Part shown: positions 3,853-64,000 of the stretch, piece after piece
How positions within the stretch are numbered: position 1 is the stretch's first letter
Layout of the letters: every line of letters starts with the position of its first letter
Origin: Octopus sinensis
Taxonomy: Eukaryota
DNA length: 64,000 nucleotides
Reading direction: 5' to 3'
Assembly (NCBI RefSeq): GCF_006345805.1
Contig: NC_043019.1
Coordinates: 2,542,001 to 2,606,000, forward strand
Notes under the pieces: model-generated
What the model was told of the DNA's origin: nothing
The model's database searches: none
What the model saw: the letters and a program-made list of their open reading frames with translations, nothing else
Program-made: the position numbers and the translations under genes

Positions 3853-3934
3853 GCACCCGTTTACACTTATACGTAAGTGTGTATACGTGTATATGTGTGA
3901 GTGAACGCACAAGCATGCGCGTGTAAACATGTGC

Positions 3935-28766: not shown

Positions 28767-29163
28767 ACGGAATATGTTATGCTCAAACCGGAGACCTAGT
28801 CGAAATTCTTGCAAAAGACTTTAAAGTTTAGTGCTGGTATTAAACCGGGAAACATAGTAATCCAAAAATAAAAACAGTTCTCTCTGTTTCCGTCTGTCAG
28901 TAATTCACTTGTAAACTTCAACACGAAGCTATCCGTGTCAATACTGACTGAATTATTATTATTATTAAGGCCACGAGCTGGACAAAATGCTTTGTAGTAT
29001 TTCGCCAGTCGCTACGTTCTGAGTTCAAATTCTGCCGAGGTCGATTTTGCCTTTCATCTTTTTGGGGTCGATAAAATAAGTACTAGTTGTGCACAGGAGC
29101 CGCTGTGATCGGTTTAGTCTCTCCCTGAAATTGCTGACCTTGTACCAAAATTATTATTATTAT

Positions 29164-30270
29164 TACTTGCTGACCCTGCGCCATCAAAAATGACGGCTAA
29201 TTCTAGTATTCTATTTATAAATATGGATGGTAAAACAAATTAATACATTTGTCAATTTTATTTCATGGTTGTCTTTTGAGATGTGACATCCATCATCGTC
29301 TGTTGCAGAATGAACGCTGGTTCACACATGCAAACATTCACACTCACACACACCACACACACATTCATATAGCTCCATTTTACATACACACACATATACT
29401 CAAGAGTTGAAATGTTTCTCACTATTTAGTTTGCCATCACCCCTTCCTTATTCATCTACCATCCCTTTCTTTCTCATTCATATGTAGTGACGGATAAAAA
29501 CACCCGAGTATTATTATAAGTAGAGAAGCTGACCCCGTGCCGTCAAAAATGATGGCTAATTGTATTTTATATACAAACTAGCTCTATGACCCGGCGTTGC
29601 TGGGTCATAGTGCTAGTGCATGCATATACAACTGCGTGCGTGCGCACATACACGCGAGTGCTGTCCAAATCTCCGACCAATCACATACAGCTAGCTGGCA
29701 TTCAATTGGCGTATCAAGTTTCAGGCATTTTGATTGGGTTCTGGATAGAAAATTCACAAAAAAGTCACTTCTATTGATTTTTTAATGGCTTTGCGGGGTG
29801 ACTGGGGAAATGTAAAAACGTGCACGACCACCCTTGGACGGTTTTGAATGACCATAGAAAGTGCGAGCCCTCTAACTGAAAAATTGTGGATTTGTATAAA
29901 GGACACGCACACACACATTTTGCAGTTTATATATAGAGAGATATGGCTGGTAAATCAAGTTAATATATTTGTCAATGTTATCTAGTGGTTGTCTTTTGAG
30001 ATGTGACATCGATCATCGTTTGTTACTGAAAGAAAGCTAGTTCACACATACAAACATTCACATACTTCCCTTGTACACTCACACACATACACATATATAC
30101 TCACACAGAATTGAAACGCTATTTGATTTTTCTTTTCAGCGTTGAATGTTCACCATCCCACTTCCATTGCACACACACACACAAACACACACACACACAC
30201 ACCACAAACATTCACATACCTCTCTTTTACACACACACACATATATTCACACCGAGTTGAATACTTTTAG
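29164..30270. repeat. Tandem duplication of a unit of about 350 bp; the second unit is interrupted by a Helitron
   Basis: GCTGACCC.G.GCC.TCAAAAATGA.GGCTAATT and GGTTGTCTTTTGAGATGTGACATC each occur twice. Confidence 0.8.
29578..29941 (-). mobile_element. Non-autonomous Helitron, family H1 (second copy)
   Basis: TC...CTAG termini and A|T target; an empty-site paralogue is at about 29216-29230. Confidence 0.88.
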
Positions 30271-30377
30271 AAGATAAAGCGGCAACTGCCGCGAACTTTT
30301 TTGCTGGCTCATGCAGCTGGTTCGTTTCTTGGATTATTTCGACCGACATATTCGTTCGAAATAAATGATACACAATT

Positions 30378-30785
30378 TAATCCCAGAAAAAGGGAAACTT
30401 ATAATTTTTTACTTTTTTTTTCCCCTCTTAACGAGGACAACAGTTCAAATCCCACCCCCGCTGGGGGGCGAGACGTAGCAACAAAGCCTACAACGTTCAA
30501 AATTTTTTTTTTTTAACACAATAATAAAATATAAAATCCCCAAAAACGGGAAACCTATAATATTTTTCCCCTCACAACGAGGACAACAGTTCAAATCTCG
30601 CCCATGCTAGTGGCGGATGCCACAGTAGAGCCTACAACGGCTAAAATCTAATTTTTCTCGAAATAATAAATTACTTATCCCAAAAAACGGGAAACCTATA
30701 ATTTTTTTCCCCTCTTAATGAGGATAACAGTTCAAATGCCACCCCCACTGGGGGGGGGGGGCACGACAATAAAGCCTACAACCGC
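30378..30785. repeat. Three degenerate tandem units of about 150 bp
   Basis: ATCCC..AAAA.GGGAAAC.TATAAT..TTTTCCCCTC..AA.GAGGA.AACAGTTCAAAT...AGCCTACAAC, three times. Confidence 0.85.
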
Positions 30786-31033
30786 TTAAGTAAGTTCAAT
30801 ATTAGTAATATTAATAAGTTCAATATTAATAATTTCAATATTTCAACAATTACTTTCTCCCCTCACCGGGAAAAGGCACAAAAACATTCAAAGTCCAACA
30901 ATGTTCAACATTTCGAAAATATTCAACAATAGACAACACTTCCAATAGAGAAAATTATCCATATATATATAGATAGGTGTGTGTATGTATATAAGTATAT
31001 ATGTATGTACATAGATATATATGTATATATTAT

Positions 31034-31384
31034 GGATGCGCAATGGCCCAGTGGTTAGGGCAGCGGACTCGTGGTTATAAGATCGTGGTTTCAATTCCCA
31101 GACCGGGCGTTGAGTGTTTATTGAGCGAAAACACCTAAAGCTCCAAGAGGCTCCAGCAGGAAGTAGTGGTGAACCCTGCTGTACTCATTCACCACAACTT
31201 TCTCTCACTCTTTTTTCCTGTTGCTGTTATACCTGTATTTCAAAGGGCTAGCCTTGTCAAACTCTGTGTCACATTGAATCTCTCCAAGAAATCCGTTGTC
31301 TGTGGAGTGCTCAGCTACTTGCACGTTAATTTCACGAGCAAGCCGTTCTGTTAATCAGATCAACTGAAACCCTCGTCGTCGTAA
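31034..31384 (+). mobile_element. tRNA-Arg-derived SINE (family C)
   Basis: GGATGCGCAATGGCCCAGTGGTTAGGGCAGCGGACTCG head; body similar to 2214-2501. Confidence 0.75.
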
Positions 31385-32849
31385 TATGAGTAGGTAAGCC
31401 CGGTTTCACCCGGTCTGTTTGGATGACGTGGCTGTGATCGTTTTCGGTTAGGCATAATCTATAACAGCGTTTCTCAACCTTAGCGTTTTGGGTCCCCTGT
31501 TTCGATTGGAGCCTCCAGCTGTATGAAAATTTCCTGACTCCCCACCGCCTTGTCAGAAAACAGCTTCAGGAGATGTGAAGAACGAATTTGTACGTAGTCT
31601 GTTTCTGAGAGCTATTCTATTGGACTCTGTCTAATCATTAAAACATTGATCTAATTATGAACATAGAAAGAAATTATACATTAATCCCTATTTTTGTAAG
31701 CAGTTGTATCTGTAAAAAAATTTATTTGCAGAGAGCAGAAATTGAAAGAAGATACATGAAATGGACGTGTGTGTGCGTGTGAGCGTGCATGCTTGCGCGT
31801 GTGTATGTGAGAGAGAAAGAGAGTGAGAAAGTGAGATAGAGTGAGTGAGTGAAGGTGTGTGTCGTGATGATTGACGTCTTTTAAGGTACACACACATACA
31901 TAGAAAATGTGAGGTCGTCGTATAAAATTTTTACGATAGTTAATTTATGGAAAATATGTTAAATTTTTGAAATGCAAATAAGTGAATGAAATTTAAGTTC
32001 AGACCTCTAAATGGTAGGTATACCTGGTGCAAATAACAGCCAAATCTCCCCCAAAATACCCTAGTGTCTTAATTCTGGCCATTATGTAGTTGGAATGAGA
32101 AACTGTAACTAAATATTAAGATTGTTAACCCCACAAAGAGGTGAAAGAAGAGAGACAGCACAGTGAAAGTTTTGGTTGATTATCATCCTGTACTCCCCTT
32201 GTTGCTAGCGAAATGGTATATGCCGGCTGTGTGAGCAACATGTTGTTTTAATGGCGGAACAAACAGGGGAATTCCATTAGAAAAGTTTTAATCGATTTTC
32301 TCGGTAATTATGGGGGCTAGGAAAAAGGACAAACCGCATTCCAATCTAGGCACCCGTCTCCATATCTGTGCCATTCACGCGAACCTCAAGACAAGAAAGA
32401 ATACAACGATCGCCCATGTCCAATTTATATTATAGATATATATGTATATATATGTATATAATATGTATTTAAATATATATATATATATATATAATAAAAG
32501 GTAAAATCATAAATGATGTATATGTATACAGTCCTGTTATTATTATTATTGTTTTTTGTATTTATATTCGTGTGGCATCGTCCGTTTTTCTGTCCTTGTT
32601 TCGTATACATTCGATCCTTTCACCAAGAAATCTAATGCTCGTAGCTTAGTTTTTCCTTGGGGCTGGCCGGATCGGAGCGATCTCAAGATTAATCAGCCGA
32701 AATTGCGAGGATGATCCGGTTCTTGACTGAAGATTAGAGGCTTCGAATGACCCGTCCGTTTTTTTTCGTGTCGTCTATTTGAATGTTTTGCGTTCTTGTC
32801 CCATTTTGTATTTATATATATATTTTTTAATACATACATACATATATAT

Positions 32850-32895
<46 letters not shown>

Positions 32896-32898
<3 letters not shown>

Positions 32899-33900
32899 TA
32901 CGTTGAGGCCCAAATATTCTCAAGTTTCACTGGTCCTACTCCCGAACTATACGGCCGTTATATTGACGACTGTATCAGTGCGACCTCACTCTCCCGCGAA
33001 CATCTAGACTCCTTCCTCTCTTTTGTCAAATCTTTCCATCCTGCCCTTTCTCCTGCACTATCTCTGACACCTCTGTCTCCTTTCTTGACATTCGGTCTGC
33101 ATTCATCACTCCACTCTCACCACCTCCATCCACTACAAACACACAGACTCATACTCATACCGTAACTTCTCCTCCTCCCACCCAAGACACATCAAGTTTC
33201 CCATCCCCTATTCTCCATCTACGCAGGCTCTGTAGTGACGACCACAACTTTGAGACTCAGTCTCAACTCATGGCTGGCCACTTCATCCTATGTGGATATC
33301 CCCTCACCACTATCCATACTGCCCTTGACAGAGCACGTTCCATGGATCGTGTATCTGCTCTCTCCGTCCTGCCATCTCCCGTCTACCGTTTCCCCTCACC
33401 ACCCTACCTTCCAATGCACCATTCTCCGAGCCTTCCAGCGACTCAAGTCCGACCGCTCCACTTTGCATATCTTCCCTAACAAACGCCTCCCCTCCTTCAA
33501 ACGAGCCCACAACCTACGAGACCTCTTTGTCCACAGCTTCTTCCGTAACCCAACCTCCCAACCCGGCTCGGTCCCCTGCTCTCGCCCACACTGTCACACT
33601 TGACCTTACCTCTCCAACACCATCCTCCTCACCAGCACCCATCATCGACCCTATCACATCACCGACTCCTTCACCTGCACTTCTACCAATGTCATCTGCA
33701 TTTCCTGCTCTCTCTGCCCTTCTCTATACATCAGGCAAACAAGACACCTCCAAGACATCCGACTCGGCAATGACACCCCAGTCTCGCACCATTTCCACTC
33801 TACCAGTCACTCTTTGCAACACCTGTCTGTGTTCGGATTGTCCTTGCACAGGGGCCATCCGGACTCCTGTTTGCACCGTGAACAGGGATTAATCTTCATT
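32896..33900 (+). mobile_element. Penelope-like element remnant (RT plus GIY-YIG endonuclease)
   Basis: LYGRYIDD, FVKSFHPAL, RRLCSDDHNFETQ, SFKRAHNLRDLFVH, PGSVPCSRPHCHT and ITDSFTCTSTNVICISCSLCPSLYI; frameshifted. Confidence 0.88.
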
Positions 33901-34504
33901 CCTTTGCACCACATGGGCTCAACTCTCCTCCCCTTCCCTATCTCCCCCTCCCACCCACTTATCTTCTCTTGCTCTGACTCCTAATTCTCTTCACTCCTAC
34001 TCTCCTCACTTCTTTTCACTCCTACCTATATTTTCCCTTCCCTCATAACCCCATCTTCCCTATGCATCCCATTCCACCCCCATCCCTCACACCCACTCAC
34101 CTCACCTCTACGCCCACCCTCAGCCTACCCACATACCCCTAACCAACACCCCACACTTCCTTTCCCTATTCTCGCCTCCCCACTGCCCAACACCATCATA
34201 CCACACCACTACGCCAGACATCACCATATCACACTACACATCACATCACACCACTACATATGCACACGTCAAGGTCACCAGCCGTCTTCCAGACACACAT
34301 ACATACTCTCTTATACACTTGCATGCACACGTTCGTTTTGGGATCACCACTACTTTATTATCTTCCCTTCTTCCTAGCTCTTTTGTGCGACCCCCTCTAT
34401 CCGGCATTCACCATGATGGATCGCTAGCCACTACACATTCTTTATTTTCTCTCCTTATTTTTATACACCATCTGTCTTCACCTGTTTTTTTTTGTGATTT
34501 CTCC

Positions 34505-35070
34505 CCTATATATATGTGTATGTATATAGATATATATATGTAAACATACATATATATGAATATGTATATATATAAATATATATATATATATAAATATGTA
34601 TATATATATTTATAAAAATATGTATATAAATATGAATATGTATATATATAAATATGTATATAAATATGAATATGTCTATATATAAAATGTATATATGTAT
34701 ATGTATTATGTATATATATATATATATATACTATATTATATATAATTATAAAAATATGCATATTTCTAAAAATATGCATATAAATATGAATATGTATATA
34801 TATATATATGTAATAAATATATATATGTATATATATGTGTGTATATATGTATATATATGTGTGTATATATGTATATATATGTGTGTGTGTATATGTATAT
34901 ATATGTGTGTGTATATATGTATATATATGTGTGTGTATATATGTATGTGTGTGTGTGTATATGTATATATATGTGTGTATATATGTATATATCTATATAT
35001 ATATGTACATATATATATAAAGAGAGTGAGGGACTGAGAAAGCTCACATATTATATATATTATATAATGC
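34505..35070. repeat. Compound (TA)/(TG) microsatellite
   Basis: Directly visible; source of spurious ORFs. Confidence 0.95.
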
Positions 35071-36269
35071 ATGTCTGTATTTGTGTTTGAAAACTGGTGT
35101 TGGTTTGCTTATGTCTCTGTAACTTAGTGATTCAGTTTTAGAAACCAATAGAATATGTACCAGACTGAAAAATAAGTACTAGGGTTGATTCGTTTGATTA
35201 ATCCCTTCATTGCGTTGTCCCAGCAGGATTGCAGTCAAATGATTGAAGCAAAGAAATGATAAAGGTTTACCAGTTTCAAATGAAACCCAATCATTTAATT
35301 CAAATATTTGTTTTTTCAATTTTGTTTTACAAGGTAATTACTTGTATGTGGTGCTCTAGCTTGGATGATTAAAACAAACAAAAGTACATAATACTGAAAT
35401 AAATTCCTCAGTCTCTTATTATTACATTGTTACTACTACTGTCTCTTTACATTCTGAGTGCAAATACCGCGAGGAAAACTTTGCCTTTCATCTTGTGAGA
35501 GTCGATAGAATAAAGTACCAGTCAAGTACTAGGGTTGATATAATCAACTACCACCACCCCCAATGGCTGGACTTGGACCAAAATTTAAATCAATTTTTAC
35601 ACATCTCTCATTCCAAACAGACTCACGGAACTTTTCTTTTCTTCAAAGGTCTTTGTTCGCGATGTCAGTAAGTACACCTATCAACAATATACCAAGTTGA
35701 ATCCTTTTTACCATTATAGCAATGTGGGTGTCCCTGTGTGTGTGTTGTGTGTGTGTGTGTTCATGGTGTGTGTGTGTGTGTGTTCGTGTGTGTATGTGCA
35801 TAGGTAGGTCAGTGGTTAGATAGATATTGTATAACATTCTTGTTGCAGTATAAGTTTTGTGTGAGAATTTGTAGTTCAGTGCTCACACACACACACACAT
35901 ATTCTTACTTTAATTCGTTTGAGTTTGTTTAAACGATTATGTGCAAACTGGCGTGGAATGTAACTTTAGAGTTGAGATTTCATTGGACCAAAAAAAGAAA
36001 CAACTTCAGGCTACCAAAAGAAAAAAAAAAAAAAACCAACTTTATGCTTTTAATGATCATAACAGCAGGGAACCATACCTTCCAAGTCTCTGTTCCAAAG
36101 AAAATTGGTTTGATTGTTGCCTGTTCAAGAAAACCCACCCACACAATTTTATCGTCTAACAAACCCTAATTCCTGAAACATGGTTTACTTCAACCTATAA
36201 GAAACTTTTAATACGAATCACCAAGGAACAGCAGCTACATCTTTTACAGTTCATATCCTGCCATTTTTT

Positions 36270-36685
36270 GCATCTTTTCGGTTTGAACGGCAGTTTTTCT
36301 AGCGGTGTCATATGAAATTGTCACCCATAATTATGACCCTAGTATCGATCTATTGCATTTCAATCTGTTTTAGGGTTACAGTTAGGGGTGGGGGGAAGGG
36401 TATCTCTTTTTCTTCAGAAATGTAAATAAACCCAATCTGTTTCTTAAACGAGGGACATATTCATATGACACAGAATGTTTTCACCTCAATAGACATCATT
36501 GATTGGTTGAAATTGCAGAAATTGAAGAAAAAAAGCAACAAATATCTTACAAACTATAGAATTTTCCCAATAAAGCCAAGAGAAAAAGATGTTTTATAAA
36601 CTCATTCTACGAATATATGAAGTTTAAAAGTGTTTAGTTACGTGGAAATTATTTTAAAAAACTGCCGTTCAAACCGAAAAGATCC
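36270..36685 (+). mobile_element. GGATC-MITE, full length, 8-bp TSD CATTTTTT
   Basis: TSD at 36262-36269 and 36686-36693; the left terminus is mutated to GCATC. Confidence 0.9.
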
Positions 36686-38408
36686 CATTTTTTATATAAC
36701 ATGCACAGTGCTTTGTTTAACACCATCACCTAGTTCTTGGGTCTTTGTTTAGTGGAGTTACCTTTTTTTTGTAAACATTCAAACTAAACCATCCATTTCC
36801 TCCCCACTTCGACCATGATTTTCTTGCACACACTGACTTTATTTCTTTTTTTTTTTTTTAAACTTGTATTGCAATTTGGGATTAAGTGAACATGTTGGAA
36901 TGCTCAAAAGAGATTATTTCTTTCTCCGAGGAAAGACTTTGCCTGAAACATCAGTATGCTCTTCTTACTACATCTTTATTCTTTTACTTGTTTCAGTCAT
37001 TAGACTGTGGCCATACTGGAGCACCGCTTTGAGGAATTTTAGTCGATCTAATGAACCCAAAAACCAAAATATAAAAAAATTGTATGGTTTAAGGGTTATT
37101 TAGCTGTTATTTCTCATGACCACCTGATACCATCCTCGTTTCTTTTTCACTCTGACATATAGATGTTTTGCAATATCTTTTTCTACATAAACACATTTAA
37201 TGGTCTATTGCTGGAATTTAAACAAAAAATTCGGACTGATTTTTTTCTTTTAAAAATTGAAAAATAAAAATGAATTTTAAAAAATTTCGAAAAAGAAAAT
37301 TCTGTTTTTCATAGTGGTATGAATTCCTATATGTAGTATACAAATTCGTAAAAAGTTTCTGAAAATTCCAAAAAATAATGAGAGTTCTTAGGGGATGCTT
37401 AAAGCAGAATTCTGCCTGTCTGCCTTCTCAATACACTCACCTTCACCACCAACGAGAAACACTCATTGACATAGTTTTACTTCATAAATCAGTAACTCAC
37501 GTGTGATGTTATTCCATATAAGTATATATAATATATTTTACACAAGTGAAGTCGAGACAGATTTCCTTCATTAGAGGTGAAGCTTTACGGGTGACGACTT
37601 CTTCCATGATAGAGATAATAGATATCAATATTATTCAGTCAATTCATTGCTGTTCTGGTTGTAACTTTCTAAAGTTCCTGGAAATACTTCTGTTGGTAGG
37701 AAAAAATTCAATGGTTCATCTCAAAGCCACACTCGACTTCCCTATGCTACAGTATATATCATAGCAGAATACCGAGCATAGGACAACTATGGAAACAGGC
37801 ATGAATATGCCTGTGGCTTACGATTGGCTGAAATTACCCAAAATTTTCAAACTTTTTAATAGCTAATAATTATTTATTGATTTATGGTGAAAATGATTTT
37901 CACGGCATTGATTAGCATATAAAAGTATATTATTACACTGAATATGAAACCAATTCGAATAGAAATTGAAGAGATTGAAAATTGGCAGCCAAACAGAAAA
38001 GATCCGAAGTTGCAGTACTGTTATAAATATGTTTCGCAGTACTAGGATACACTCCTTTAAGTTCTCAGTTCAAATCCGGATCAGATTGAGATAATTTTGT
38101 TATATTCTGTGGTCGCTGAAATTTACTTACTGGGATCCACAAATAAGCGGAATTACTTTATAGCTAAAAATTCAATTTATGTTATTTACTTAAAAAAAAA
38201 AAAACTTTTATTAGGCGAGCCATCATCACTATCGCTGTGTGTTACTGTGTGTAACTAGGGGGAAAATCATTTGAAATTTATACCTGTTGGAACAAGAATA
38301 AACACTGCCACATAAAACCGATTGCCTTACCATTTCGGTCGACTTACCCTTAATTTTTCGGTTAAATTATCACCCTTAATTAAAAACAAAATTTAAAAAA
38401 TGCTTTCC

Positions 38409-47003: not shown

Positions 47004-47778
47004 GCAATTAAGGTTATGGTAGTTAATTAAGCATCGAATAGATAGAAGCGAAATTCGATAAGGGGGTTTCTCTTTCTGCAACAGACAATATTTGCGCATG
47101 CGTATTAATGAAATAATGCGTCGTCTGCTTGAACACTGCAAACATGACATGGCGACTGCGAGCTGAAACTTTTAGTTAGGAACATTTATTAATTTATGTA
47201 TAGCTCTAGTGAAAAATAGCGACAGTTTACTATTTTAAAGGAAAAGAATAATCTTATAAGCAGGTATTTCAGTCATTTATTTCTTCCTGTATAGTCTGTG
47301 TTAAAGATTTTTGCTCTTAGATATTTTCTTCTATTTTTTTTATATCTTACCGGGGCAAACGTTGAACGAGAAAGTTTGAACAATAGCTTATACATACATA
47401 TATATATATAACTGAAAAATTATGGCTTTTTTACCCCTCCTATCCTCCCCTCTCTGTATCGATTTTGTTGACACAAAACACCATTTGGGGTGGGGGCCAC
47501 TACGAACGTAAAAACTATTGAAGACTTTTCGGTTAAAAGAAAACTATTTTCAGACGTAAAGGTGTGTAATTAAAGGGAAACTTGGCTGTTGTTTCTAGCA
47601 TGTCCCATGACCAGTAAGGTTTAGGGTTGTTAAAATTGTATTGAAAATAGACTTATTTTCCTGAACGTTATGAAGAAACAAAGTCAATTCGTGCGAAAAA
47701 TCCGAATCGTCTTTCTCCACCCCCGAACCGATTTTACACAGATAATCCTGGTATAATCGCATTGTATATTATCCAGGG

Positions 47779-49795: not shown

Positions 49796-50264
49796 AGCTG
49801 AATACTTTTCCCTCTCAAATCGAAAAATGTATATTGTACATATTGCAATTAAAGTTATTGTAGTTAATTTATTTATAATTTTTTTATTAAGGCAATTATT
49901 TTTAATGAAAGCCTGGAGTAGATAGAAGCGAAATTCGATAAGGGGGTTTCTCTTTCTGCAACAGACAATATTTGCGCATGCGTATTAATGAAATAATGCG
50001 TCGTCTGCTTGAACACTGCAAACATGACATGGCGACTGCGAGCTGAAACTTTTAGTTAGGAACATTTATTAATTTATGTATAGCTCTAATGAAAAAATAG
50101 CGACAGTTTAATAGTTTAAAGGAAAAGAATAATCTTATAAGCAGGTATTTCAGTCATTTATTTCTTCCTCTATAGTCTGTGTTCAAGATTTTTTCTCTTA
50201 GATATTTTCTTCTATTTTTTGATATCTTACCGGGGCAAACGTTGAACGAGAAAGTCATTTTTCA

Positions 50265-50315
<51 letters not shown>

Positions 50316-52829: not shown

Positions 52830-53290
52830 CTGGTGATTAAAAATGGATCTTCTATCGAAATGTTAGGTGTCGTAAACAGTGGCTTGGTAAAGGGGAAAAA
52901 GCTCACCCACAACTGAGAAGGGAACTTCATGGAAAAAAAGGTTCTTTTCTCTATCTGGTGGTATTGCAAAGGAGTAGTTCACTTTGAATTGTTACCACCT
53001 AATGCAACAATCAATGCTCAAACCTACTGTCAGCAATTAGAGCGTTTGAACCAAGCTTTGAAGAAAAAATTATCCACTTTAGTGAATCAAAAAGGAGTAA
53101 TGTTTCATCAGGACAATGTGCTACCCCACACTGCAAAGATCACATCACAGAAGATGGAAGAGCCTGGTTGGGAAAAAATTCCTTGTCCACCTTATTCTCC
53201 TGACCTTGCTCCTTCAGACTACTATTTGTTTCGTAGTTTACAGAATCAAGATTTTCAATGATGTCTTCAGAATGTCTTAAGAAATAACAA
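52830..53290 (+). pseudogene. mariner transposase remnant, catalytic domain
   Basis: VTGD*KWIFY, IWWYCKGVVHFELL, FHQDNVLPH, PPYSPDLAPSDYYLFRSLQN. Confidence 0.92.
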
Positions 53291-54149: not shown

Positions 54150-56222
54150 TTTGCTGAACATTCTCCATTAACGTTAAAACCAATGAATTGTCTTTCTAGC
54201 CACACAGTCTTTTTTGTAACATAATGCAAAATAGTTGACAGGTGTGAATAGTTGAATAGATCAGATGTTTCATTTGAAAGAATAGCAATGATTCTAGCCT
54301 GCTTAAGTTCATTTTCTATTTCATTCAAAGTAACTTTTTGAATTGCACCAAACAAGTCATTTTGAATTCTGTGGAAATTTAAAATGTCAACTGTATCTAG
54401 ATGGCTTGCCAGGTTTTCATGGTGCTTATTAAATTATAAGAGTTCTTTATAATTCCTGTGATTAGTGGGTTTATAAAATTCAAAATAACCCCAAAACAAT
54501 AATTCTTGGCAACCTAAAAAATTAACTGCAGCAACCAGTCTTTGTTTTGTTAACTTCTTTATTATACTGATTTATGCTCTGTCTTTAATGTGCATCTTAG
54601 TGTAAGCTTATGCAAACATTCCCAAATGTTTTAAGATTTATCAATGATTTTATGTTATTGAGAATGTCCATATTTTATCCCGGCCATTGGTAGATTATTT
54701 AAATCATTCTAATCTTTATCATTCCAAACAGTTTTTTTCTGAACTAAACAGCAGGCATGGCCAGCAAAATAAGTTAGCTTAGCACTCCCATTTAACCATT
54801 TTTTCTTTCATATCAATCTGACAATATACAATTCATTTCTTGTTGGAACTTCACAAATTAGTTCATTTTAGTGGCATTAGTTTGTCATCATTTTTAATTA
54901 ATAGTTTCTGTTCAATATCTATTTTTCAAAAGCTTTTTTTGCGACACATATTTCTGACATTTGGACTAAGATTTCAGAAGTTCAAAAGATAATAATAAAA
55001 ATTAAAGGTGGTAATGTTTTAATGTGATTGTGTGTGTGGACATATGTATGTATCTTTTCTGTTAAAAAGGAGTACACTAAAAGTTAACTTGGATAAAATG
55101 GCAGATAATACTAATAAAGCAAAGGGTTTAATTACCTAATGAATACAGTGAAAGAAAATGTAACTGTTTTCCTTTTGGGACATGAAATATTAATCAGAAA
55201 ATGAATAAATCTTTGTTTCCATTATGTAAATTGTCTTTCTTGGTCTGCAAAGCTTTTGTGTCATAGTAATCTGATAAACTTAATGAGAATGACAGAGGTT
55301 TTTTTTTTTTGTGAAAAGGGCTGAATTGTCTCTATTTAGTGCTTTTTCTCACCTTTCACTTGAGGTCAGTCATCACTTGTGGGTCAATTATTTAATATAT
55401 CAAATATGAAGAAATGAGAAGAGTGTATATGTAGATAGGTATTTACAGCTAGATAGAGGAAGGCAGTAAGAAGCTACATGCATTTTCAAAAATGCATGCC
55501 TTTTAATGGTATCTTAATGGATTAAGAAATTATGTCAGAATAGCATTCTTTTTATGTGGAAATAATCCAACAGTTTTTTTGTATCTAGCATGACAGAGAA
55601 ATTGTTTCCTCAGTTCATCTCCCAAATAAATTTACAAATTCAATTTTCAATAGTTTTGACAACTTTCAATGTGTGTAGAGATAAAATACATATTTGAATT
55701 TAATTTTAGACGTATGAAAAAATAAATCAACATGCATTGCATGACTTGTGTATCTTGAGTACATGCTGCTGGTGTGTGTGTGTGTGTACATGTAAATACA
55801 TATGCATAAACATGTGTATGTATATTCATATATCATTATCATCATTTAACGTCTGCCCTTGTACAGTTTACTGGAACTGGCAAGCCAGAGGATTGTGCCA
55901 AGTTCTATTGTTTGCTTTGGCATTGTTTCTACTGGTGGGTACACTTACTAATGCCAAACTGTTCAACCCATACCAGCTTAGAAGGCAGACATTAATTGAT
56001 GATATGTGTGTGTGTGTATGCACACATGTATATATAATTATATATACATGTGTATAGGTATATGTAAATATTTATGCATGTTTATATACTTTTGTCTATA
56101 ATTGTATATGAACATGTGTGCATGTTTATACTAAAATAAAGAAATTGGTTCATTAATTAGTTATGAATATATGTCTGTAAACAGTAGCATTGCAAATATC
56201 TGGGCAATCTTTATATTTCCAG

Positions 56223-56374
56223 AATAAGTTTAAAGATGTTAAAAAACACTATTGATGTCACAGCAAATAAAAATTAGTTAATCTGATTGAAGTATGTTGC
56301 TGAAATCTTCAACAGTAAAAGTTACTTGAAAATTATATTTTTATAAAAACATACTCAAAGATATGGTCATAGAG
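56223..56374 (+). other. Mostly 5'-UTR exon of the microexon gene; the last 12 nt (ATG at 56363) may encode MVIE
   Basis: CTTTATATTTCCAG acceptor and GAG|GTAAGT donor; ATG GTC ATA GAG is in frame with the next exon. Confidence 0.55.
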
Positions 56375-56827
56375 GTAAGTTACCCTGCAGATGTGAATGT
56401 CACTTCAAAAATCAGTGAGAAGGAAAATATCTGTGGATGAAACCAGCAACTCTTCTACACTGATTATTAATTTATGTTCATAATAATCATTGTCACACTC
56501 AGTTATGTTAGTAAAAAAAAAAAGAAAGATATTTAGTTTTAAAAGGAGATATTCAACCTCTCTTAAAGCATAGAAGAATGGAATCCTATAATTCATCCAA
56601 AGGTTAAAGTTTTAGTTTTTACCAACTACCTAGTGCTTGCCTTTGTAACATTTAAAATAGAATAGTGACAATCATCAACATTTAAATTCACATTATTAAT
56701 TGATCTCTATCACTTTCACTGACCACTCTAAGTTCAGCATAATTTCATTACAAAAGATGAATACTAAAACCAATAAACTAAAAATTTTAAATGTTTAATT
56801 TTATTTTTTACCATTTTCTATTTTCAG

Positions 56828-56906
56828 TTAATCATGGGCCGGTGGCTAGAAATTTCCTGCTTTCTCCTCTTCCTATTTTATTTTAGTTCTCAAGACTCAG
56901 TTTATG
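56828..56906 (+). CDS. Signal-peptide exon (LI)MGRWLEISCFLLFLFYFSSQDSVY-G of an unidentified secreted or membrane protein
   Basis: CCATTTTCTATTTTCAG acceptor, ATG at 56834, hydrophobic core, phase-1 G|GTAAGT donor. Confidence 0.75.
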
Positions 56907-57603
56907 GTAAGTAGATACATACTTAATATTTATTCATAGGATTTGTGGCATCAAATGTAAATTGATGTACACTATCTTTAAAATGTTGCATCTGTCTCTC
57001 AATCTTCACTGTTAATCTCATAACTGACCTCCAAATTTTTCACCTTCATGAGCACCATCTACTTTTCTTGTGAATACTTTTGCTGTCCATTCTTTTCTTG
57101 TAAACACAATGCACAGCATTACAAATAGTGAAATTCCTAACATATACTGCTTTGTTTCTTCAATCCAATAATATATTCTTGTGAGAAAGTGTCTCAAAGT
57201 ATTCCAACTTAAATTTAATAATAATTTTTTTTTTTTAATCACATCATTATTAAAAATTTAAGAGTAACATCTTCTCTGATTTCCTTAAGCTTCCTTCTCA
57301 TAATTTTGTAAATACTTTTTATGGTTATATTCTTTTACTTTATGTATTTAGAGAAACAAATTAAAATTAATAATTGATATTCTTTATCAAAACAAATATA
57401 ATGTGACCATTCCAATGAAGTTTTGCAAAAGTTGCTAATATCTATTTTCTTTTATATGTAAGAAATACAGTCAACTTTACAAACTCACACTGAGGATCTT
57501 TTAATTTAATTCAGTTTTTAAGTTTTATATTTTTCTTCAATACTATGAATTGCCAAAAAGCCTATTCTGAATGTTTATACTAAGCTATTACTAATTATTA
57601 CAG

Positions 57604-57621
57604 GTAACAAGATTGATATGA
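57604..57621 (+). CDS. 18-nt microexon (G-NKIDM), phase 1-1
   Basis: TACTAAT branch-like motif, TTATTACAG acceptor, A|GTAAGT donor; frame preserved. Confidence 0.7.
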   Translation, partial: VTRLI

Positions 57622-59495
57622 GTAAGTACAATATTTTTCATTTTGTTTTATATGTATTGCTTTGTCAAAATATTAAAAAAAACCGTTGGAGGTTATATTT
57701 ATACTGTTTAATGACTATGATTTAACAAGTGTTTAAAAAGCATACTTTATAATTAATCTTAATTCAATAGATTTCCTCTAACCCTTTTTGAAATATCAAC
57801 TTTAAACTGATTCTCAAAATAGACCTGTATATGTTTGTATGTGTGTTTATGTATATATATCATTCAACCATGATAGTGCTTGAATATATTCTTAAATCCA
57901 CTATTTGTCAATCACAGCTTCACCACTAATTCAGTTCTCAACTAAATTGCAAACTGTTAATAGTTTTAAAGAGGACACCTACTCAGCTACACTTTGGCAT
58001 AAATAGTTCGAGATTTGGTTCAGTAGAAAAAAAGTTACATCAAAATATCTGTGACCTCAAGGGGGGCAGTAAGGTAGATATTCATCTTCAATTAACATAA
58101 ATTTTAAAATTTTAAATTACAAGTATACTTTACTTAGCATTAAATGATAGAAAATGCATGAGAAATTCAGAATTGTGAGTTGCATTGAACAAAAATTAGT
58201 AGAAAAGCAGTTATGAAGTAAAATGTTATGAAATTTAATGTCAGTAAGTAAGGAAGTAACACTTAAGCAATAAGAATAAAGAATATATTTCTAAAATGAA
58301 TGTTTACATTCTAAGGTGGTGAGCTGGCAGAAATGTTAGTGCACCGGGCGAAATGCTTAGTGGTATTTCATCTGTCTTTACATTTTGAGTTCAAATTTCA
58401 CTGAGGTCAACTTTGAAGTACAGATGTATTAGAATGCAGGAGATTGCCAATGTGAATGAAGGGATATTCAAGTGGCATATTACCATCTAACTTGATGTGT
58501 GTCCATTCCAAATGCTCTTCATGGCTTCTGGCCCAGCTAGACTTATGTATAAGATAGTTACGTGTTGTGTGTGTTTATTTTTTGGGGGCAGGGACTGCTT
58601 GAGAGAGAGTTTGCATAAATACACTGGTATTTTAGTGGTTGACAATATTTTAAATCATAAATTCTTTTATATTTTACAATAAAAGTAACAATTTCAATAC
58701 TTCAATAGTACCATTCACTTGTAACATTTTAATAATTTTTATCTTGTAATAATTTTTATCTTGTAATAATTTTAGTAAGTCAGCAGACTGGCAGAAACAA
58801 TGAAAATATCTAACAGTATTCATAAGTTTCATATTTTATATTCTATGTAAAAGTTATACAAAGCTTACTGAAGTATTATATAGTCCCTTATTAAAATCCT
58901 TCACTAACTACTACTTTATTAACCATATAAACTTTATTTTTATTTTCATATTTTTTATTGTAATAAACTTTATGCAAAATTTGTACTTTGTATTGCCATT
59001 ATATGTGCTTTTGAAAAATGTAAAAAACATTGTAGGTCAACTAGTAAAATAACATAAGTTAAAATTTTTTGACAGAATTCAGTGTTAATGCAAGATTATG
59101 ATCCCTTCAGTTTATTATCACAATTATCCTCTGCTTCAATAACAGATTGTAAACGTTTAGAATTATAAAATATTTGCAATTGCCTATTGTTATTTGTATA
59201 TGTCAAAAGGTAAACATAAATATTTTTTTAATAAAAATAATCCATCCATATATAAGAATTACCTATGTATAATATTACTAATCACTTAAATTACAAATCA
59301 TTATTATTAATAGGCAAAATGTGAGTACATTTCTAACTGTTTATTACAAATACTGAAGTGTATCATTAAAATTATTAGCAATGTAAATATTTGGCAAATT
59401 TCTTGAACAATTAAAATATTTTCATGGCTAAAATAATAAAATTTTCAACCTTTATTTCTTATAGTGTTATGTTAATGTTTTATTCTTGTTTACAG

Positions 59496-59516
59496 CTGGC
59501 ATACAAAATGCTAAAA
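59496..59516 (+). CDS. 21-nt microexon (T-GIQNAK), phase 1-1
   Basis: TTTTATTCTTGTTTACAG acceptor, A|GTAAGT donor; frame preserved. Confidence 0.72.
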
Positions 59517-59667
59517 GTAAGTTGGTATCTATGCAAAAAAATAAAAAAAAAGATTAATTCTTAAAATATATACTTCTCACAATGTCCAAAGCTTATTAAA
59601 AGCTTGAATCAATGCTAACACTTGTCTCATTTCAATATTGTTATAAACTACTTAAAACGAATTTCAG

Positions 59668-59732
59668 AAGAATATCAAAGAATATTCCATGATAAAAGCA
59701 ATGATACTAATCAACTAAACATCAGTGAATGA
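59668..59732 (+). CDS. Candidate next exon K-EYQRIFHDKSNDTNQLNISE* (terminal, or a 57-nt internal exon ending at 59724)
   Basis: GCTAAC branch-like motif and ATTTCAG acceptor; open in phase 1; two N-x-S/T sequons. Confidence 0.45.
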
Positions 59733-60123
59733 AAATGAAGTTGAAAATTGGAGAGAAAATATTGCTTTTTTCAATGTTTGAGTTAAAAAAGATTTTGTCA
59801 TATATGTTTATGGCCTTTGTAACCAAAGTCTTTCGCTTGAATATAATTTCATTCAGAATTTATACTAATTAACTAATTTTCAGTTTTTTATGAATTAATC
59901 TGAAATAGAAATTTTACAATATAATTGCATACATGTGTGTGTGTGTGTGTATAAATAAGTGTATATATATATATGTGTGGGTGTGTACCTATATATGTAT
60001 ATGTATATATATAGGAGTATGTATATATATATGGATATATATATGTATAAGTTTATGTATATATATGGATATATATATGTATAAGTTTATATATATATAT
60101 ATATATATATAGGAGTATGTATA

Positions 60124-60167
<44 letters not shown>

Positions 60168-60191
60168 AGTATGTATGTATATGGATGTATA

Positions 60192-60397
60192 TATGCTCTG
60201 TCTGGCACCTGTGCGGGTGGCACGTAAAAAGCACCCATTACACTCACGGAGTGGTTGGCATTAGGAAGGGCATCCAGCCGTAGAAACACTGCCAGATCTG
60301 ACTGGGCCTGACGAAGCCTTCCAGCTTCACAGACCCCAGTTGAACCGTCCAACCCATGCTAGCATGGAAAGCGGATGCTAAATGATGATGATGATAT
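60192..60397 (+). mobile_element. Family D retroposon
   Basis: Same modules as 24335-24668. Confidence 0.8.
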
Positions 60398-60490
60398 GCA
60401 TGTTTATATATGTATATACATATATGTATACGTTTATGTATGTATATGTATATATGTCTGTATATATATATGTCTATATATATATATATC

Positions 60491-60782
60491 TTCATCATCA
60501 TCATCGTTTAACGTCCGTTCTCCATGCTAGCATAGGTTGGACGGTTCGACCGGGGATCTGGGAAGCCAGAAGGCTGCACCAGGCTCCAGTCTTATCTGGC
60601 AATATTTCTACAGCTGGATGCCCTTCCTAACGCCAACCACTCTGTGAGTGTAGTGGGTGCTTTTTACGTGCCACCTGCACAGGTGCCAGGCGAGGCTGGC
60701 AACGGCCACGGTTGGATTGGTGCGATTTACGTGCCACCGGCACAGATGCCAGTCGAGGCGGCGCTGGCATCGGCCACGAGTC
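60491..60782 (-). mobile_element. Family D retroposon, inverted relative to 60192-60397
   Basis: Reverse-complement copy starting CATCATCATCGTTTAACGTCCG. Confidence 0.8.
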
Positions 60783-60784
60783 GG

Positions 60785-60973
60785 ATATATATATGTATGT
60801 ATATATATATATATATATGTATGTATATATATATGTATGTATATATATATGTATGTATATATATATGTATGTATATATATATGTATGTATATATATATGT
60901 ATGTATATATATATATATGTATGTATATATATATGTATGTATATATATATGTATGTATATATATATATATATG

Positions 60974-61010
<37 letters not shown>

Positions 61011-61027
61011 GTATGTATATATGTATG

Positions 61028-61058
<31 letters not shown>

Positions 61059-61171
61059 ATATGTATGTATATATGTATGTATGTATATATGTATGTATGT
61101 ATATATGTATGTATATATATATGTATGTATATATATATATGTATATATATATGTATGTATATATATATGTC

Positions 61172-61205
<34 letters not shown>

Positions 61206-61771
61206 TGTGTATATATATGTATGTATATATATATATGTCTATATATATGTATGTATATATATATATGTCTATATATATGTATGTATATATATATATGTCT
61301 ATATATATGTATGTATATATGTATGTATGTATATATGTATGTATATATGTATGTATGTATATATGTATGTATATATGTATGTATGTATATATGTATGTAT
61401 ATATGTATGTATATATGTATGTATGTATATATGTATGTATGTATGTATATATATATATGTATGTATATATATATGTATGTATGTATATATATATGTATGT
61501 ATGTATATATATATGTCTATGTATGTATATATATGTCTGTATGTATGTATGTATATATATATGTCTATATGTATGTATGTATATATATATGTCTATATGT
61601 ATGTATGTATATATATGTCTATATGTATGTATGTATATATATGTCTATATGTATGTATGTATATATATGTCTATATATATGCATGTATATGTATGTCTAT
61701 ATGTATATATATGTATGTCTATATGTATATATATGTATGTATATATATATTTATGTATGTATATATATATT

Positions 61772-61824
<53 letters not shown>

Positions 61825-61855
61825 TTATGTGTATATGTATATATATATTTATGTG

Positions 61856-61892
<37 letters not shown>

Positions 61893-62063
61893 GTATATGT
61901 ATGTATGTATATATACATTTATATCTATGTATATGTAACTATATATATGTATGTATATATATGTGTATATATATATTTATATCTGTATATGTAACTATAT
62001 ATATGTATGTATATATATGTGTATATATATATTTATATCTGTATATGTAACTATATGTATGTA

Positions 62064-62157
<94 letters not shown>

Positions 62158-62207
62158 TATGTAGGTGCATATATATTTTTATATGTAACTATATGTATGT
62201 ATGTGTG

Positions 62208-62273
<66 letters not shown>

Positions 62274-62685
62274 GGTGCATATATATGTATATATATATAT
62301 GCATATATGTATATATATATATGCATATATGTATATATATATATGCATATATGTATATATATATATGCATATATGTATATATATATATGCATATATGTAT
62401 ATATATATGCATATATGTATATATATATGCATATATGTATATATATATGCATATATGTATATATATATGCATATATGTATATATATATGCATATATGTAT
62501 ATATATATGCATATATGTATATGTATATATATATGCATATATGTATATATATATGCATATATGTATATATATATGCATATATGTATATGTATATATATAT
62601 GCATATATGTATATGTATGTATGTGTATATATGTGTGTGTGTATATGTGTATGTATATGTGTGTGTGTATATGTGTATATATATG

Positions 62686-62716
<31 letters not shown>

Positions 62717-62890
62717 GTATGTATGTGCATATATATATACATATGCATATATGTATACATATATATGTATATATATACATGTATATATATGCCTATGTAT
62801 GTATATGTGTATATATGTATATACACATATGTGTGTGTATGTATATATGTATATGTATGTATGTATATATATATATGTCTATATATGTTT
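60785..62890. repeat. Compound alternating purine-pyrimidine satellite of about 2.1 kb
   Basis: (TA)n interspersed with TG, TC and GC variants. Confidence 0.95.
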
Positions 62891-62936
62891 ATAGATCATC
62901 ATCGTTTAGCGTCCGCTTTCCGTGCTAGCATGGGTT

Positions 62937-63470
62937 GGATCCAGAGAAGATTCACAAAGATCTTCTCTTTGCAACAGCTCAGCTACTGGGAAAGGCTGAA
63001 ATAGCTAAGACTCTACTCCCTGGAGAGAAGACGGAAGAGGTATGCAGTAATATATAGCTGGAAAATCCTGGAAGGAATTGTGCCAAATTTTGGCATTGAA
63101 AGCTACACTAATGCCAGAGCGGGACGACACTGCATAGTGCCAAAGATCCCAGCAATGCCATCACGCTTCAGGACCAGTTACTGCAACAGCCTGGTTTTCA
63201 ATGGCCCACAACTTTTTAATATTCTCCCAAAGAGTCTGAGGAACTTGCACAAAGTAGATGTATGGGTTTTTAAATCAAAGCTAGACCTCTTCCTGTCGAG
63301 AGTCCCAGATGAGCCTACCTCACGGCAAGAGGTGCAAATGAGGGTAGCTATATCAAACTCCATTCTTCATCAAGTGCCACATATTAGAGGAGGCTTCTAG
63401 TAATAACAGTGTAGCACAAACTGGCGGTGCATCAGCATGGCCACAGCTCTGAGCTGAAACTTAAAAAAAA
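62937..63470 (+). mobile_element. CR1/L2-group LINE 3' end
   Basis: IQRRFTK..SYWERLK*LRLYSLERRRKRY..WKILEGIVPNFG..FKSKLDLFLSRVPDEP..SNSILHQ*, then a short 3' UTR and an A run. Confidence 0.85.
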
Positions 63471-63711
63471 AATTGCGTTTATTAATGGGTATATATACAA
63501 AAGTATATATGCATATATATATATCTATATATATATATATATATGCATATATATATGTATATCTATATATATATGCATATATATATATGTATATCTATAT
63601 ATATATGCATATATATAATATCCATATATATATGCATATATATATATAATATCCATATATATATATAAACATACATGCATATATATATATATGCATATAT
63701 CTGTATATATA

Positions 63712-64000
63712 AAACTGAGAATAGGTGTGAAATAGAAACTAATACTATGGAGAGCATTCAGCAAATAGCTAACTCTATCTACCAGAGTATTAAGGTCACA
63801 ATAGACTACCCTACTAAACACCCTAACCATAGACTACCAGTACTAGACACAGAACTCTGGCTAGAAACTGAGAATAATAAAACCTGAATCCTTCATTTGT
63901 ACTATGCCAAACCTATGGCTTCCAAATACTTGATCCACCGGAATTCAGCTATTGCGAACACTGCCAAATTCAATATTTTGATGGCAGACCTTGTTAGAAT
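63712..64000 (+). mobile_element. Penelope-like RT fragment running off the window
   Basis: [48 protein letters not shown]. Confidence 0.8.

What the first reader, a model, noticed from the sequence alone, without database searches (positions are those of the whole stretch)
56223..59732. Microexon gene for an unrecognised secreted protein
Four splice-flanked exons join in one frame: (MVIE|LI)MGRWLEISCFLLFLFYFSSQDSVYG|NKIDM|TGIQNAK. All four use GTAAGT donors, and the 18-nt and 21-nt exons are symmetric (phase 1-1), so either could be skipped without a frameshift. A signal-peptide exon followed by symmetric microexons is the architecture of Schistosoma micro-exon genes, which diversify secreted proteins by exon skipping. 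The gene is invisible to the ORF track and lies in CpG-depleted DNA. I do not recognise the protein. That this is a MEG-like diversifying system is inference.
Basis: partly seen in the sequence, partly recalled or inferred. Interest (0 to 1): 0.85.

Follow-up and report, generated by a model that had tools for sequence, protein, structure and literature searches.

The report
Start of octopus VWA-domain matrix-protein gene

Summary
The signal-peptide exon (56828-56906, ATG at 56834), the 18-nt exon (57604-57621) and the 21-nt exon (59496-59516) align base for base with the first three coding exons of an annotated Octopus bimaculoides gene: XP_052831932.1 / XP_052831933.1, "collagen alpha-6(VI)/alpha-3(VI) chain" isoforms X1/X2. 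The window is the orthologous locus of a sister Octopus species, with about 93% identity in aligned non-exon DNA. In O. bimaculoides the gene has 9 coding exons: the signal exon, five small linker exons (18, 21, 33, 42 and 30 nt) and three exons of about 560-580 nt, each holding one VWA domain. Every internal exon is phase 1-1. Isoform X2 is exactly X1 minus the 21-nt exon, so the predicted skipping is already annotated. The protein is recognisable (3 x Pfam VWA; best solved relative is collagen VI alpha-3). Microexons encode only 48 of 640 residues, so the defining MEG feature is not met. The 5' exon carrying "MVIE" (56223-56374) remains unverified. This is an ordinary modular extracellular-matrix gene and is already known.

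The parts
56223..56374 (+). Candidate 5' untranslated exon. It is not verified as an exon.
   Evidence: Sequence. It is 146/152 identical to O. bimaculoides with both splice sites kept, but the flanking DNA is equally conserved. The RefSeq CDS starts at MGRW. An in-frame stop lies 11 codons upstream of the ATG.
56828..56906 (+). First coding exon. The start codon is at 56834. It encodes the signal peptide MGRWLEISCFLLFLFYFSSQDSVYG and ends in phase 1 with a GTAAGT donor.
   Evidence: It is 79/79 identical to L003 9995-10073, which is coding exon 1 of XP_052831932.1. The hydrophobic core spans residues 4-17, and V-Y-G at positions -3 to -1 puts a likely cleavage site at the exon end (heuristic only).
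57604..57621 (+). 18-nt microexon, phase 1-1, encoding (G)NKIDM. It is present in all annotated isoforms of the ortholog.
   Evidence: It aligns to L003 10729-10746, which is coding exon 2. Identity is 17/18, and the last base is A here versus G in O. bimaculoides.
59496..59516 (+). 21-nt cassette microexon, phase 1-1, encoding TGIQNAK (AGIKNAK in O. bimaculoides).
   Evidence: It aligns to L003 12572-12592, which is coding exon 3. Identity is 20/21 (CAA versus AAA). It is included in isoform X1 and skipped in X2.
56907..57603 (+). Intron between the signal exon and the 18-nt exon (697 nt here, 655 nt in O. bimaculoides).
57622..59495 (+). Intron between the two microexons (1874 nt). It carries a SINE-like element at about 58318-58420 and two further conserved GTAAGT sites (58244, 58775) that close no open exon.
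59517..64000 (+). Start of the long intron before the first VWA exon. That intron is 7645 nt in O. bimaculoides, so the VWA1 exon is expected about 3 kb past the window end. The intron contains a 3-kb compound microsatellite (about 59.8-63 kb).
   Evidence: No credible phase-1 exon was found in 59560-64000.

Best explanation
Window 56.2-64 kb is the 5' end of the ortholog, in a sister Octopus species, of the O. bimaculoides gene that encodes XP_052831932.1/XP_052831933.1. That protein is secreted, about 640 residues long, and consists of a signal peptide, a short N-terminal tail and three von Willebrand factor A domains joined by short linkers.

The gene is built as a classic modular extracellular-protein gene. 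There is one signal-peptide exon ending in phase 1, followed only by phase 1-1 exons. Each VWA domain sits on its own exon of about 560-580 nt. The N-terminal tail and the inter-domain linkers sit on five microexons of 18, 21, 33, 42 and 30 nt. Because every internal exon is symmetric, any of them can be left out without shifting the frame. Annotated models differ by the 21-nt exon (X1 vs X2), by the whole VWA1 exon (older model XP_014789615.1) and by the 30-nt exon (A0A0L8FI40).

The two microexons in the window encode the first 12 residues of the predicted mature protein, just ahead of the first beta-strand of VWA1.

Shown: exon identity, phases, domain content and the isoform relations among gene models. 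Inferred: signal-peptide cleavage at the exon boundary, secretion, an extracellular-matrix or adhesive role, and that the window's species has the same downstream exons.
For: - A concatenated ORF query from 56.4-59.6 kb hit two O. bimaculoides proteins whose N-terminus is 100% identical to the exon-2 peptide.
- Cluster members give XP_052831932.1 (X1, 640 aa), XP_052831933.1 (X2, 633 aa) and A0A0L8FI40.
- The locus of X1 was fetched as L003 (GCA_001194135.2, CM046623.1:28269117-28312159). The window is colinear with it at 88-95% identity.
- The three coding exons align base for base.
- Nine exons joined from L003 translate exactly to X1. Removing exon 3 gives exactly X2. Removing exon 4 reproduces the first 447 residues of XP_014789615.1. 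Removing exon 8 reproduces the A0A0L8FI40 tail. All internal exons are phase 1-1.
- Pfam finds 3 x VWA PF00092, E = 6e-95.
- The best solved relative is collagen VI alpha-3 (9han_C, E = 2.5e-115), followed by mussel proximal thread matrix protein 1.
- 5244 library representatives match at E <= 0.001, and the best-scoring ones are long multi-VWA proteins.
- Exon 2 has 0 differences in 79 nt against a 7.1% background in aligned non-exon columns (P about 0.003).
Against: - No transcript or junction reads were available. The exon usage rests on RefSeq/UniProt gene models of another species, which are computational predictions.
- The window ends before the VWA exons, so an intact full-length gene in this species is assumed, not shown.
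- Non-coding DNA here is 90-98% identical between the two species in most 60-nt bins. Conservation therefore does not separate exons from introns.
- The signal peptide was judged by hydropathy and the -3/-1 rule only.
Confidence: 0.9

Rival explanations
1. One reading: a MEG-like diversifying gene, meaning a small secreted protein encoded mostly by symmetric microexons whose combinatorial skipping generates a pool of variants.
For: - There is a signal-peptide exon followed by symmetric microexons.
- One microexon is a cassette in annotated isoforms, and a second is absent from one older model.
- Both substitutions in the 39 nt of microexon sequence between the two species are nonsynonymous.
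Against: - Microexons encode 48 of 640 residues; the rest is three conventional VWA exons.
- MEGs are defined by most of the coding region lying in very small symmetric exons, and they appear restricted to platyhelminths (PMC4350168).
- Two substitutions are far too few to claim accelerated evolution.
Confidence: 0.04
2. A chance chain of splice-like motifs in AT-rich non-coding DNA, with the 'signal peptide' being merely the translation of a polypyrimidine tract.
For: - Symmetric, open, microexon-like candidates occur about 21 times in this window at thresholds matching the weakest real site.
- The chain's generic PWM score is exceeded in 98% of simulated windows.
- The hydrophobic core is encoded by a 31-nt C/T tract that itself ends in TTTTAG.
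Against: The same three exons, with identical boundaries, are coding exons 1-3 of an annotated ortholog, and they splice onto three VWA exons to give a complete 640-residue ORF.
Confidence: 0.01
3. The locus in the window's species is a decayed or truncated copy (pseudogene) of the O. bimaculoides gene, in which only the 5' exons look intact.
For: - The window ends before any VWA exon.
- A block that lies downstream of the gene in O. bimaculoides lies upstream and inverted in the window, so the neighbourhood is rearranged.
Against: - The start codon, all splice sites and all frames of the three coding exons are intact.
- Colinearity continues to at least 60010.
- A Logan genomic contig from another octopus sample carries intact VWA2 and VWA3 ORFs of this gene. 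Its species is not known.
Confidence: 0.04
4. The 18- and 21-nt exons are SRRM4-type neural microexons, included only in neurons.
For: - The size class (under 27 nt) fits.
- Both are symmetric with strong splice sites and highly conserved flanks.
Against: - There is no UGC motif in the 40 nt upstream of either 3' splice site.
- The host gene is a secreted VWA matrix-type protein, not a typical neuronal microexon host.
- The 18-nt exon is present in every model.
Confidence: 0.02

Closest known systems
Octopus bimaculoides XP_052831932.1 / XP_052831933.1 ('collagen alpha-6(VI) chain isoform X1' / 'collagen alpha-3(VI) chain isoform X2'). Older models are XP_014789615.1 and A0A0L8FI40.
   Same: It is the orthologous gene. 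The locus is colinear at 88-95% identity. The signal exon is identical, and the two microexons are 17/18 and 20/21 identical with the same boundaries and phases.
   Different: It is a different species. The tail reads TGIQNAK instead of AGIKNAK. If the 21-nt exon were skipped here, the junction codon would start with A rather than G and would read Asn rather than Asp if the VWA1 exon begins as in O. bimaculoides. The downstream exons are not in the window.
Vertebrate collagen VI alpha-3 N-terminal VWA array (PDB 9han chain C)
   Same: Both have tandem VWA domains behind a signal peptide (E = 2.5e-115 over residues 41-634). From established knowledge of COL6A3 (not tested here), each N-terminal VWA domain is on its own exon of about 600 bp, and several are alternatively skipped. 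That is the same gene logic found here.
   Different: This protein has no Gly-X-Y triple-helix region at all. It has only three VWA domains and 640 residues. All three domains have His in place of the first Asp of the DxSxS metal-site motif. The mature protein has a single Cys. So it is collagen-VI-like in name only.
Schistosoma micro-exon genes (MEGs)
   Same: Both have a signal peptide, symmetric microexons in multiples of 3 nt, and isoforms that differ by a few residues through exon skipping (PMC4350168).
   Different: In MEGs most of the coding region is microexons, the proteins are small, and the family appears restricted to platyhelminths. Here 7.5% of residues come from microexons and the protein is a VWA-domain protein. 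The nearest schistosome analogy is the composite VAL-6 gene, which has a conventional domain plus a MEG-like stretch (PMC4350168).
Mussel proximal thread matrix protein 1 (PTMP1, PDB 4cn8)
   Same: It is a secreted molluscan protein built from tandem VWA domains. It is the second-best solved relative (E = 4.7e-17).
   Different: The sequence relationship is distant. PTMP1 has two domains, and no byssus exists in octopus. Any functional parallel is speculation.

Membership tests
Schistosoma-type micro-exon gene (MEG) | Most of the coding region is made of very small symmetric exons (PMC4350168) | tested here: not met
   In the ortholog, 144 of 1923 coding nt (48 of 640 residues) lie in exons of 42 nt or less. 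Three exons of 561-581 nt carry the bulk.
Schistosoma-type micro-exon gene (MEG) | The product has a signal peptide | tested here: met
   MGRWLEISCFLLFLFYFSSQDSVYG has a basic n-region and a hydrophobic core with mean Kyte-Doolittle 2.0-2.5. V-Y-G sits before the exon end. This is a heuristic; SignalP was not available.
Schistosoma-type micro-exon gene (MEG) | Microexons are symmetric (multiples of 3, same phase), and isoforms arise by skipping them | tested here: met
   Five microexons of 18, 21, 33, 42 and 30 nt are all phase 1-1. X2 is X1 minus the 21-nt exon, and A0A0L8FI40 lacks the 30-nt exon. These are gene models, not reads.
Schistosoma-type micro-exon gene (MEG) | Belongs to one of the platyhelminth MEG protein families | tested here: not met
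   The protein is a VWA-domain protein (Pfam PF00092 x3; collagen VI alpha-3 is the best solved match). It comes from a cephalopod.
Tandem-VWA extracellular proteins (collagen VI N-terminal type) | Several VWA domains in tandem behind a signal peptide | tested here: met
   Three VWA stretches, E = 6e-95. The protein aligns over residues 41-634 to the collagen VI alpha-3 N-terminal array.
Tandem-VWA extracellular proteins (collagen VI N-terminal type) | One VWA domain per symmetric phase 1-1 exon, allowing module skipping | tested here: met
   Exons 20238-20801, 28860-29420 and 32463-33043 of L003 each hold one domain in phase 1. The older model XP_014789615.1 lacks exactly the VWA1 exon.
Collagen VI proper | Gly-X-Y triple-helical domain | tested here: not met
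   There is no run of four or more G-x-y triplets in the 640 residues, and Pfam reports only VWA families.
SRRM4-dependent neural microexons | UGC motif close upstream of the 3' splice site | tested here: not met
   No TGC occurs in the 40 nt upstream of 57604 or 59496.
SRRM4-dependent neural microexons | Neuron-specific inclusion | not testable with these tools
   No expression data are reachable.

The most novel reading that the evidence does not exclude
The five symmetric linker microexons of this octopus VWA gene, two of which are in the window, might be used combinatorially. This would give a family of secreted isoforms with different N-terminal tails and inter-domain linkers. The tail microexons might also evolve fast (2 of 2 substitutions between species are nonsynonymous, against 0 of 79 in the signal exon). 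That would be a composite 'conventional domains plus MEG-like stretch' gene, as proposed for schistosome VAL-6, but in a mollusc.
Probability: 0.1. Interest if true: 0.4.

Novelty: already known. Interest (0 to 1): 0.15.

Why it matters
Biologically it matters little. This is the 5' end of an annotated modular extracellular-protein gene, and the microexons and one skipping isoform are already in RefSeq for the sister species.

Its value is methodological, in three ways:
- Reading raw sequence alone, the first-stage reader placed two microexons (18 and 21 nt) and a signal exon correctly to the base.
- Generic splice-site statistics would have dismissed them as chance.
- A first database search gave a false negative.

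It also shows how a window edge can make an ordinary gene look exotic, because the three large VWA exons lie just outside the window.

Tried and rejected
The 43-aa version returned 'no candidate shares three 5-residue words'. This was a false negative of the word index, because proteins with 30 identical N-terminal residues are in the database. It must not be read as absence.
2. Chance models gave mixed results. GTAAGT is enriched (6 versus about 1.4-1.8 expected, P = 0.002-0.012), but another same-composition hexamer has 7 copies. Microexon look-alikes are common. The generic PWM chain score is unremarkable, while the strict all-GTAAGT chain is rare. I had been leaning towards 'chance or cannot tell' until.
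3. An exact look-up of a window ORF (mariner fragment) found nothing on record.
4. A control search with the LINE RT ORF showed that octopod data are in the database (Argonauta hians, Logan and NCBI contigs), but it did not identify the species.
6. The look-up of encoding contigs found no record for P0122 or P0121. P0123 worked.
7. The Logan contig L004, carrying VWA2 and VWA3, is genomic or unspliced. The ORFs are 3.5 kb apart, as in L003, so it gives no junction evidence.
9. A literature search for the accession numbers found no paper. 'micro-exon gene' plus 'cephalopod' found nothing relevant.
10. A search for further phase-1 exons in 59560-64000 found only hits inside repeats.
11. ARAGORN found no tRNA-like element.
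Full report
**What is at the coordinates.**
The window is AT-rich, repeat-rich animal DNA: 36% GC overall and 26-27% around the finding. It contains LINE reverse-transcriptase and mariner fragments and long microsatellites.

- 56363-56374, followed by GTAAGT.
- cag|56828-56906|GTAAGT (79 nt, ATG at 56834).
- cag|57604-57621|GTAAGT (18 nt).
- cag|59496-59516|GTAAGT (21 nt).

Joined, they read MVIELIMGRWLEISCFLLFLFYFSSQDSVYGNKIDMTGIQNAK. The two small exons are phase 1-1. CpG depletion is real and strong, with o/e 0.12 in 56001-59800.

**Is it more than chance? Sequence statistics could not tell.**
- At thresholds equal to the weakest site of the chain, the window holds about 21 symmetric, open microexon look-alikes on the two strands.
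- Dozens of 'signal-like exon plus two microexons' chains exist at those thresholds.
- Only the after-the-fact rule 'all donors exactly GTAAGT' made it rare, at 1/60 and 0/250 simulations.
- GTAAGT occurs 6 times on the + strand and 0 times on the - strand in 3.8 kb, against about 1.4-1.8 expected. However, another hexamer of the same composition occurs 7 times.
- The hydrophobic 'signal peptide' core is encoded by a 31-nt pyrimidine tract that could equally be a 3' splice-site tract.

A first protein search with the 43-residue joined peptide returned nothing. At that point chance was a serious rival.

**External evidence settles it.**
I concatenated the stop-to-stop ORF translations of 56.4-59.6 kb into one query. 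My aim was to catch ORF calls on orthologous contigs. The query instead hit two annotated Octopus bimaculoides proteins whose N-termini match the exon-2 peptide at 100%.
- XP_014789615.1 begins MGRWLEISCFLLFLFYFSSQDSVYG-NKIDM-AGIKNAK-...
- XP_052831933.1 ('collagen alpha-3(VI) chain isoform X2') begins MGRWLEISCFLLFLFYFSSQDSVYG-NKIDM-DSRKLDLVF....
- The cluster also holds XP_052831932.1 ('collagen alpha-6(VI) chain isoform X1', 640 aa), which carries AGIKNAK, and UniProt A0A0L8FI40.

One search was therefore a false negative of the word index.

**The window is the orthologous locus of a sister species.**
The locus of isoform X1 was fetched as L003 (GCA_001194135.2, CM046623.1:28269117-28312159, CDS 10001-33043). 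Window 51.9-60.0 kb is colinear with L003 5.4-13.1 kb at 88-95% identity. Aligned non-exon columns are 92.9% identical. That is too divergent for the same assembly or for a haplotype of it.

The three coding exons align base for base, and every acceptor and donor is kept:

| Window exon | L003 position | Identity | Difference |
|---|---|---|---|
| 56828-56906 | 9995-10073 | 79/79 | none |
| 57604-57621 | 10729-10746 | 17/18 | last base A versus G |
| 59496-59516 | 12572-12592 | 20/21 | CAA versus AAA |

The two differences explain TGIQNAK here versus AGIKNAK there, and both are nonsynonymous. Conservation as such does not discriminate, because most intronic 60-nt bins are also 90-98% identical. 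Still, exon 2 sits in a 160-nt perfectly identical run, and zero differences in 79 nt has P of about 0.003 against the local background.

**Whole-gene anatomy, in O. bimaculoides.**
Exact-match anchoring and joining give nine coding exons whose concatenation translates exactly to X1.

| Exon | L003 coordinates | Length (nt) | Content |
|---|---|---|---|
| 1 | 10001-10073 | 73 | signal peptide |
| 2 | 10729-10746 | 18 | linker |
| 3 | 12572-12592 | 21 | linker |
| 4 | 20238-20801 | 564 | VWA1 |
| 5 | 28419-28451 | 33 | linker |
| 6 | 28860-29420 | 561 | VWA2 |
| 7 | 30203-30244 | 42 | linker |
| 8 | 31056-31085 | 30 | linker |
| 9 | 32463-33043 | 581 | VWA3 and stop |

Every internal exon is phase 1-1. 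Six of the eight donors are GTAAGT.

The other gene models are related to X1 as follows:
- Removing exon 3 gives exactly X2.
- Removing exon 4 reproduces the first 447 residues of the older model XP_014789615.1.
- Removing exon 8 reproduces the tail of A0A0L8FI40.

The intron after the 21-nt exon is 7645 nt in O. bimaculoides. No credible phase-1 exon exists in 59560-64000.

**What the protein is.**
- Pfam finds three VWA domains (PF00092, E = 6e-95) and nothing else.
- The best solved relative is collagen VI alpha-3 (9han_C, E = 2.5e-115, aligning residues 41-634 to its N-terminal VWA array). Next comes mussel proximal thread matrix protein 1.
- An exhaustive HMMER scan finds 5244 representatives at E <= 0.001. 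The best-scoring ones are long multi-VWA proteins at 25-37% identity.
- There is no Gly-X-Y region.
- All three domains have His instead of the first Asp of the DxSxS metal-site motif.
- Apart from one Cys in the signal peptide, the protein has a single Cys, four residues from the C-terminus.

The protein is therefore a short secreted three-VWA protein that is 'collagen VI-like' in name only. The signal peptide is plausible: a basic n-region, a hydrophobic core with Kyte-Doolittle 2.0-2.5, and V-Y-G before the exon end. This is a heuristic judgement.

**How it most likely works.**
This is a modular extracellular-protein gene. It has a signal exon ending in phase 1, followed by domain exons and linker microexons, all phase 1-1. 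Splicing can therefore add or drop a seven-residue tail segment, a ten-residue linker or a whole VWA module without breaking the frame.

The two microexons in the window encode the first 12 residues of the predicted mature protein, directly ahead of the first strand of VWA1 (DLVFLIH...).

The exon map and the isoform relations among models are shown. Secretion, the cleavage site, a matrix or adhesive role and actual isoform usage are inferred.

**Comparison with known systems.**
The MEG reading fails its defining test. MEGs have most of their coding region in very small symmetric exons, and they appear restricted to platyhelminths (PMC4350168). Here microexons give 7.5% of the residues.

The resemblance is real but generic: a signal peptide, symmetric microexons, and skipping isoforms that differ by a few residues. 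From established knowledge, the closest gene logic is the N-terminal VWA array of vertebrate COL6A3. There, one VWA domain sits on each exon of about 600 bp, and several are alternatively skipped.

SRRM4-type neural microexons are unlikely, because there is no UGC near either 3' splice site.

**What remains open.**
- The 5' exon 56223-56374 has good splice sites and is 96% conserved, but so are its flanks. The annotated CDS starts at MGRW, although the upstream ATG would be in frame with no intervening stop. Its status and the MVIELI extension are therefore unverified.
- No junction reads could be reached. The one Logan contig of this gene is genomic.
- The species of the window was not identified.

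**Verdict.**
The feature is an already annotated, ordinary gene.

Noticed in passing
window 25442-37064 versus L003 43037-39086: This block is colinear but inverted relative to O. bimaculoides at 88-92% identity. In O. bimaculoides it lies 6-10 kb downstream of the gene's stop codon. In the window it lies 20-30 kb upstream of the gene's start. This is consistent with an inversion of the gene plus its upstream region between the two species, or with an assembly difference.
   Followed up: partly
(tool behaviour): The 43-residue joined peptide found 'no candidate sharing three 5-residue words'. Yet the database holds proteins with 30 identical N-terminal residues. Short queries can give false negatives in the word-indexed search.
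   Followed up: yes
window 58244 and 58775 (+): Two further GTAAGT sites lie in the intron between the microexons. Both are perfectly conserved with their 24-nt context in O. bimaculoides. Neither closes an open, acceptor-flanked exon in the coding frame, by inspection of the sequence. GTAAG occurs 9 times on the + strand versus once on the - strand in 56000-59800. They could be cryptic or regulatory U1 sites, or chance.
   Followed up: partly
window 56001-59800, compared with the rest of the window: CpG depletion is extreme (o/e 0.12) over the 5' part of the gene. The value is 0.26 just upstream and about 0.9 in several other 8-kb blocks. This is compatible with germline methylation of a gene body.
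   Followed up: no
window 58318-58420, inside unaligned stretch 58362-58537: A SINE-like element (GGTGAGCTGGCAGAAATGTTAGTGCACCGGGCGAAATGC...) lies in the intron. Its 3' part and the DNA after it (58362-58537) do not align with O. bimaculoides. ARAGORN sees no tRNA-like head.
   Followed up: partly
window about 59800-63000: A 3-kb compound (TA/CA/TG-rich) microsatellite with a pseudo-palindromic layout lies inside the long intron after the 21-nt exon. Similar arrays sit at L003 14771-15235 and 34319-34629.
   Followed up: no
window 81-1256 (+): This is a LINE-type reverse-transcriptase fragment (Pfam RVT_1 and zf-RVT). The closest named relative is a hypothetical protein of Argonauta hians (67%). 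Unnamed 79-82% relatives sit on short JGI contigs.
   Followed up: partly
window 3929-4249 (+) and 52929-53261 (+): These are mariner/Mos1-type transposase fragments, carrying HTH_48 and Transposase_1 respectively.
   Followed up: no
window 24310-24621 (-), 60053-60352 (-), 60644-60760 (+): Three copies of an unnamed repeat whose translation reads [37 protein letters not shown]. Pfam finds nothing in the one copy tested, 24310-24621.
   Followed up: no
window 47050-47376 and 49930-50283: Two window segments both match the same O. bimaculoides segment (L003 2443-2794) at about 87.5%. This is a local duplication or a dispersed repeat upstream of the gene.
   Followed up: no
L003 exons 4, 6 and 9 (ortholog protein residues 43-53, 242-252, 453-463): All three VWA domains read D[LI]VF..H.S.. 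in place of the canonical DxSxS motif. The metal-ion site is probably not intact. The mature protein has only one Cys (residue 637).
   Followed up: partly
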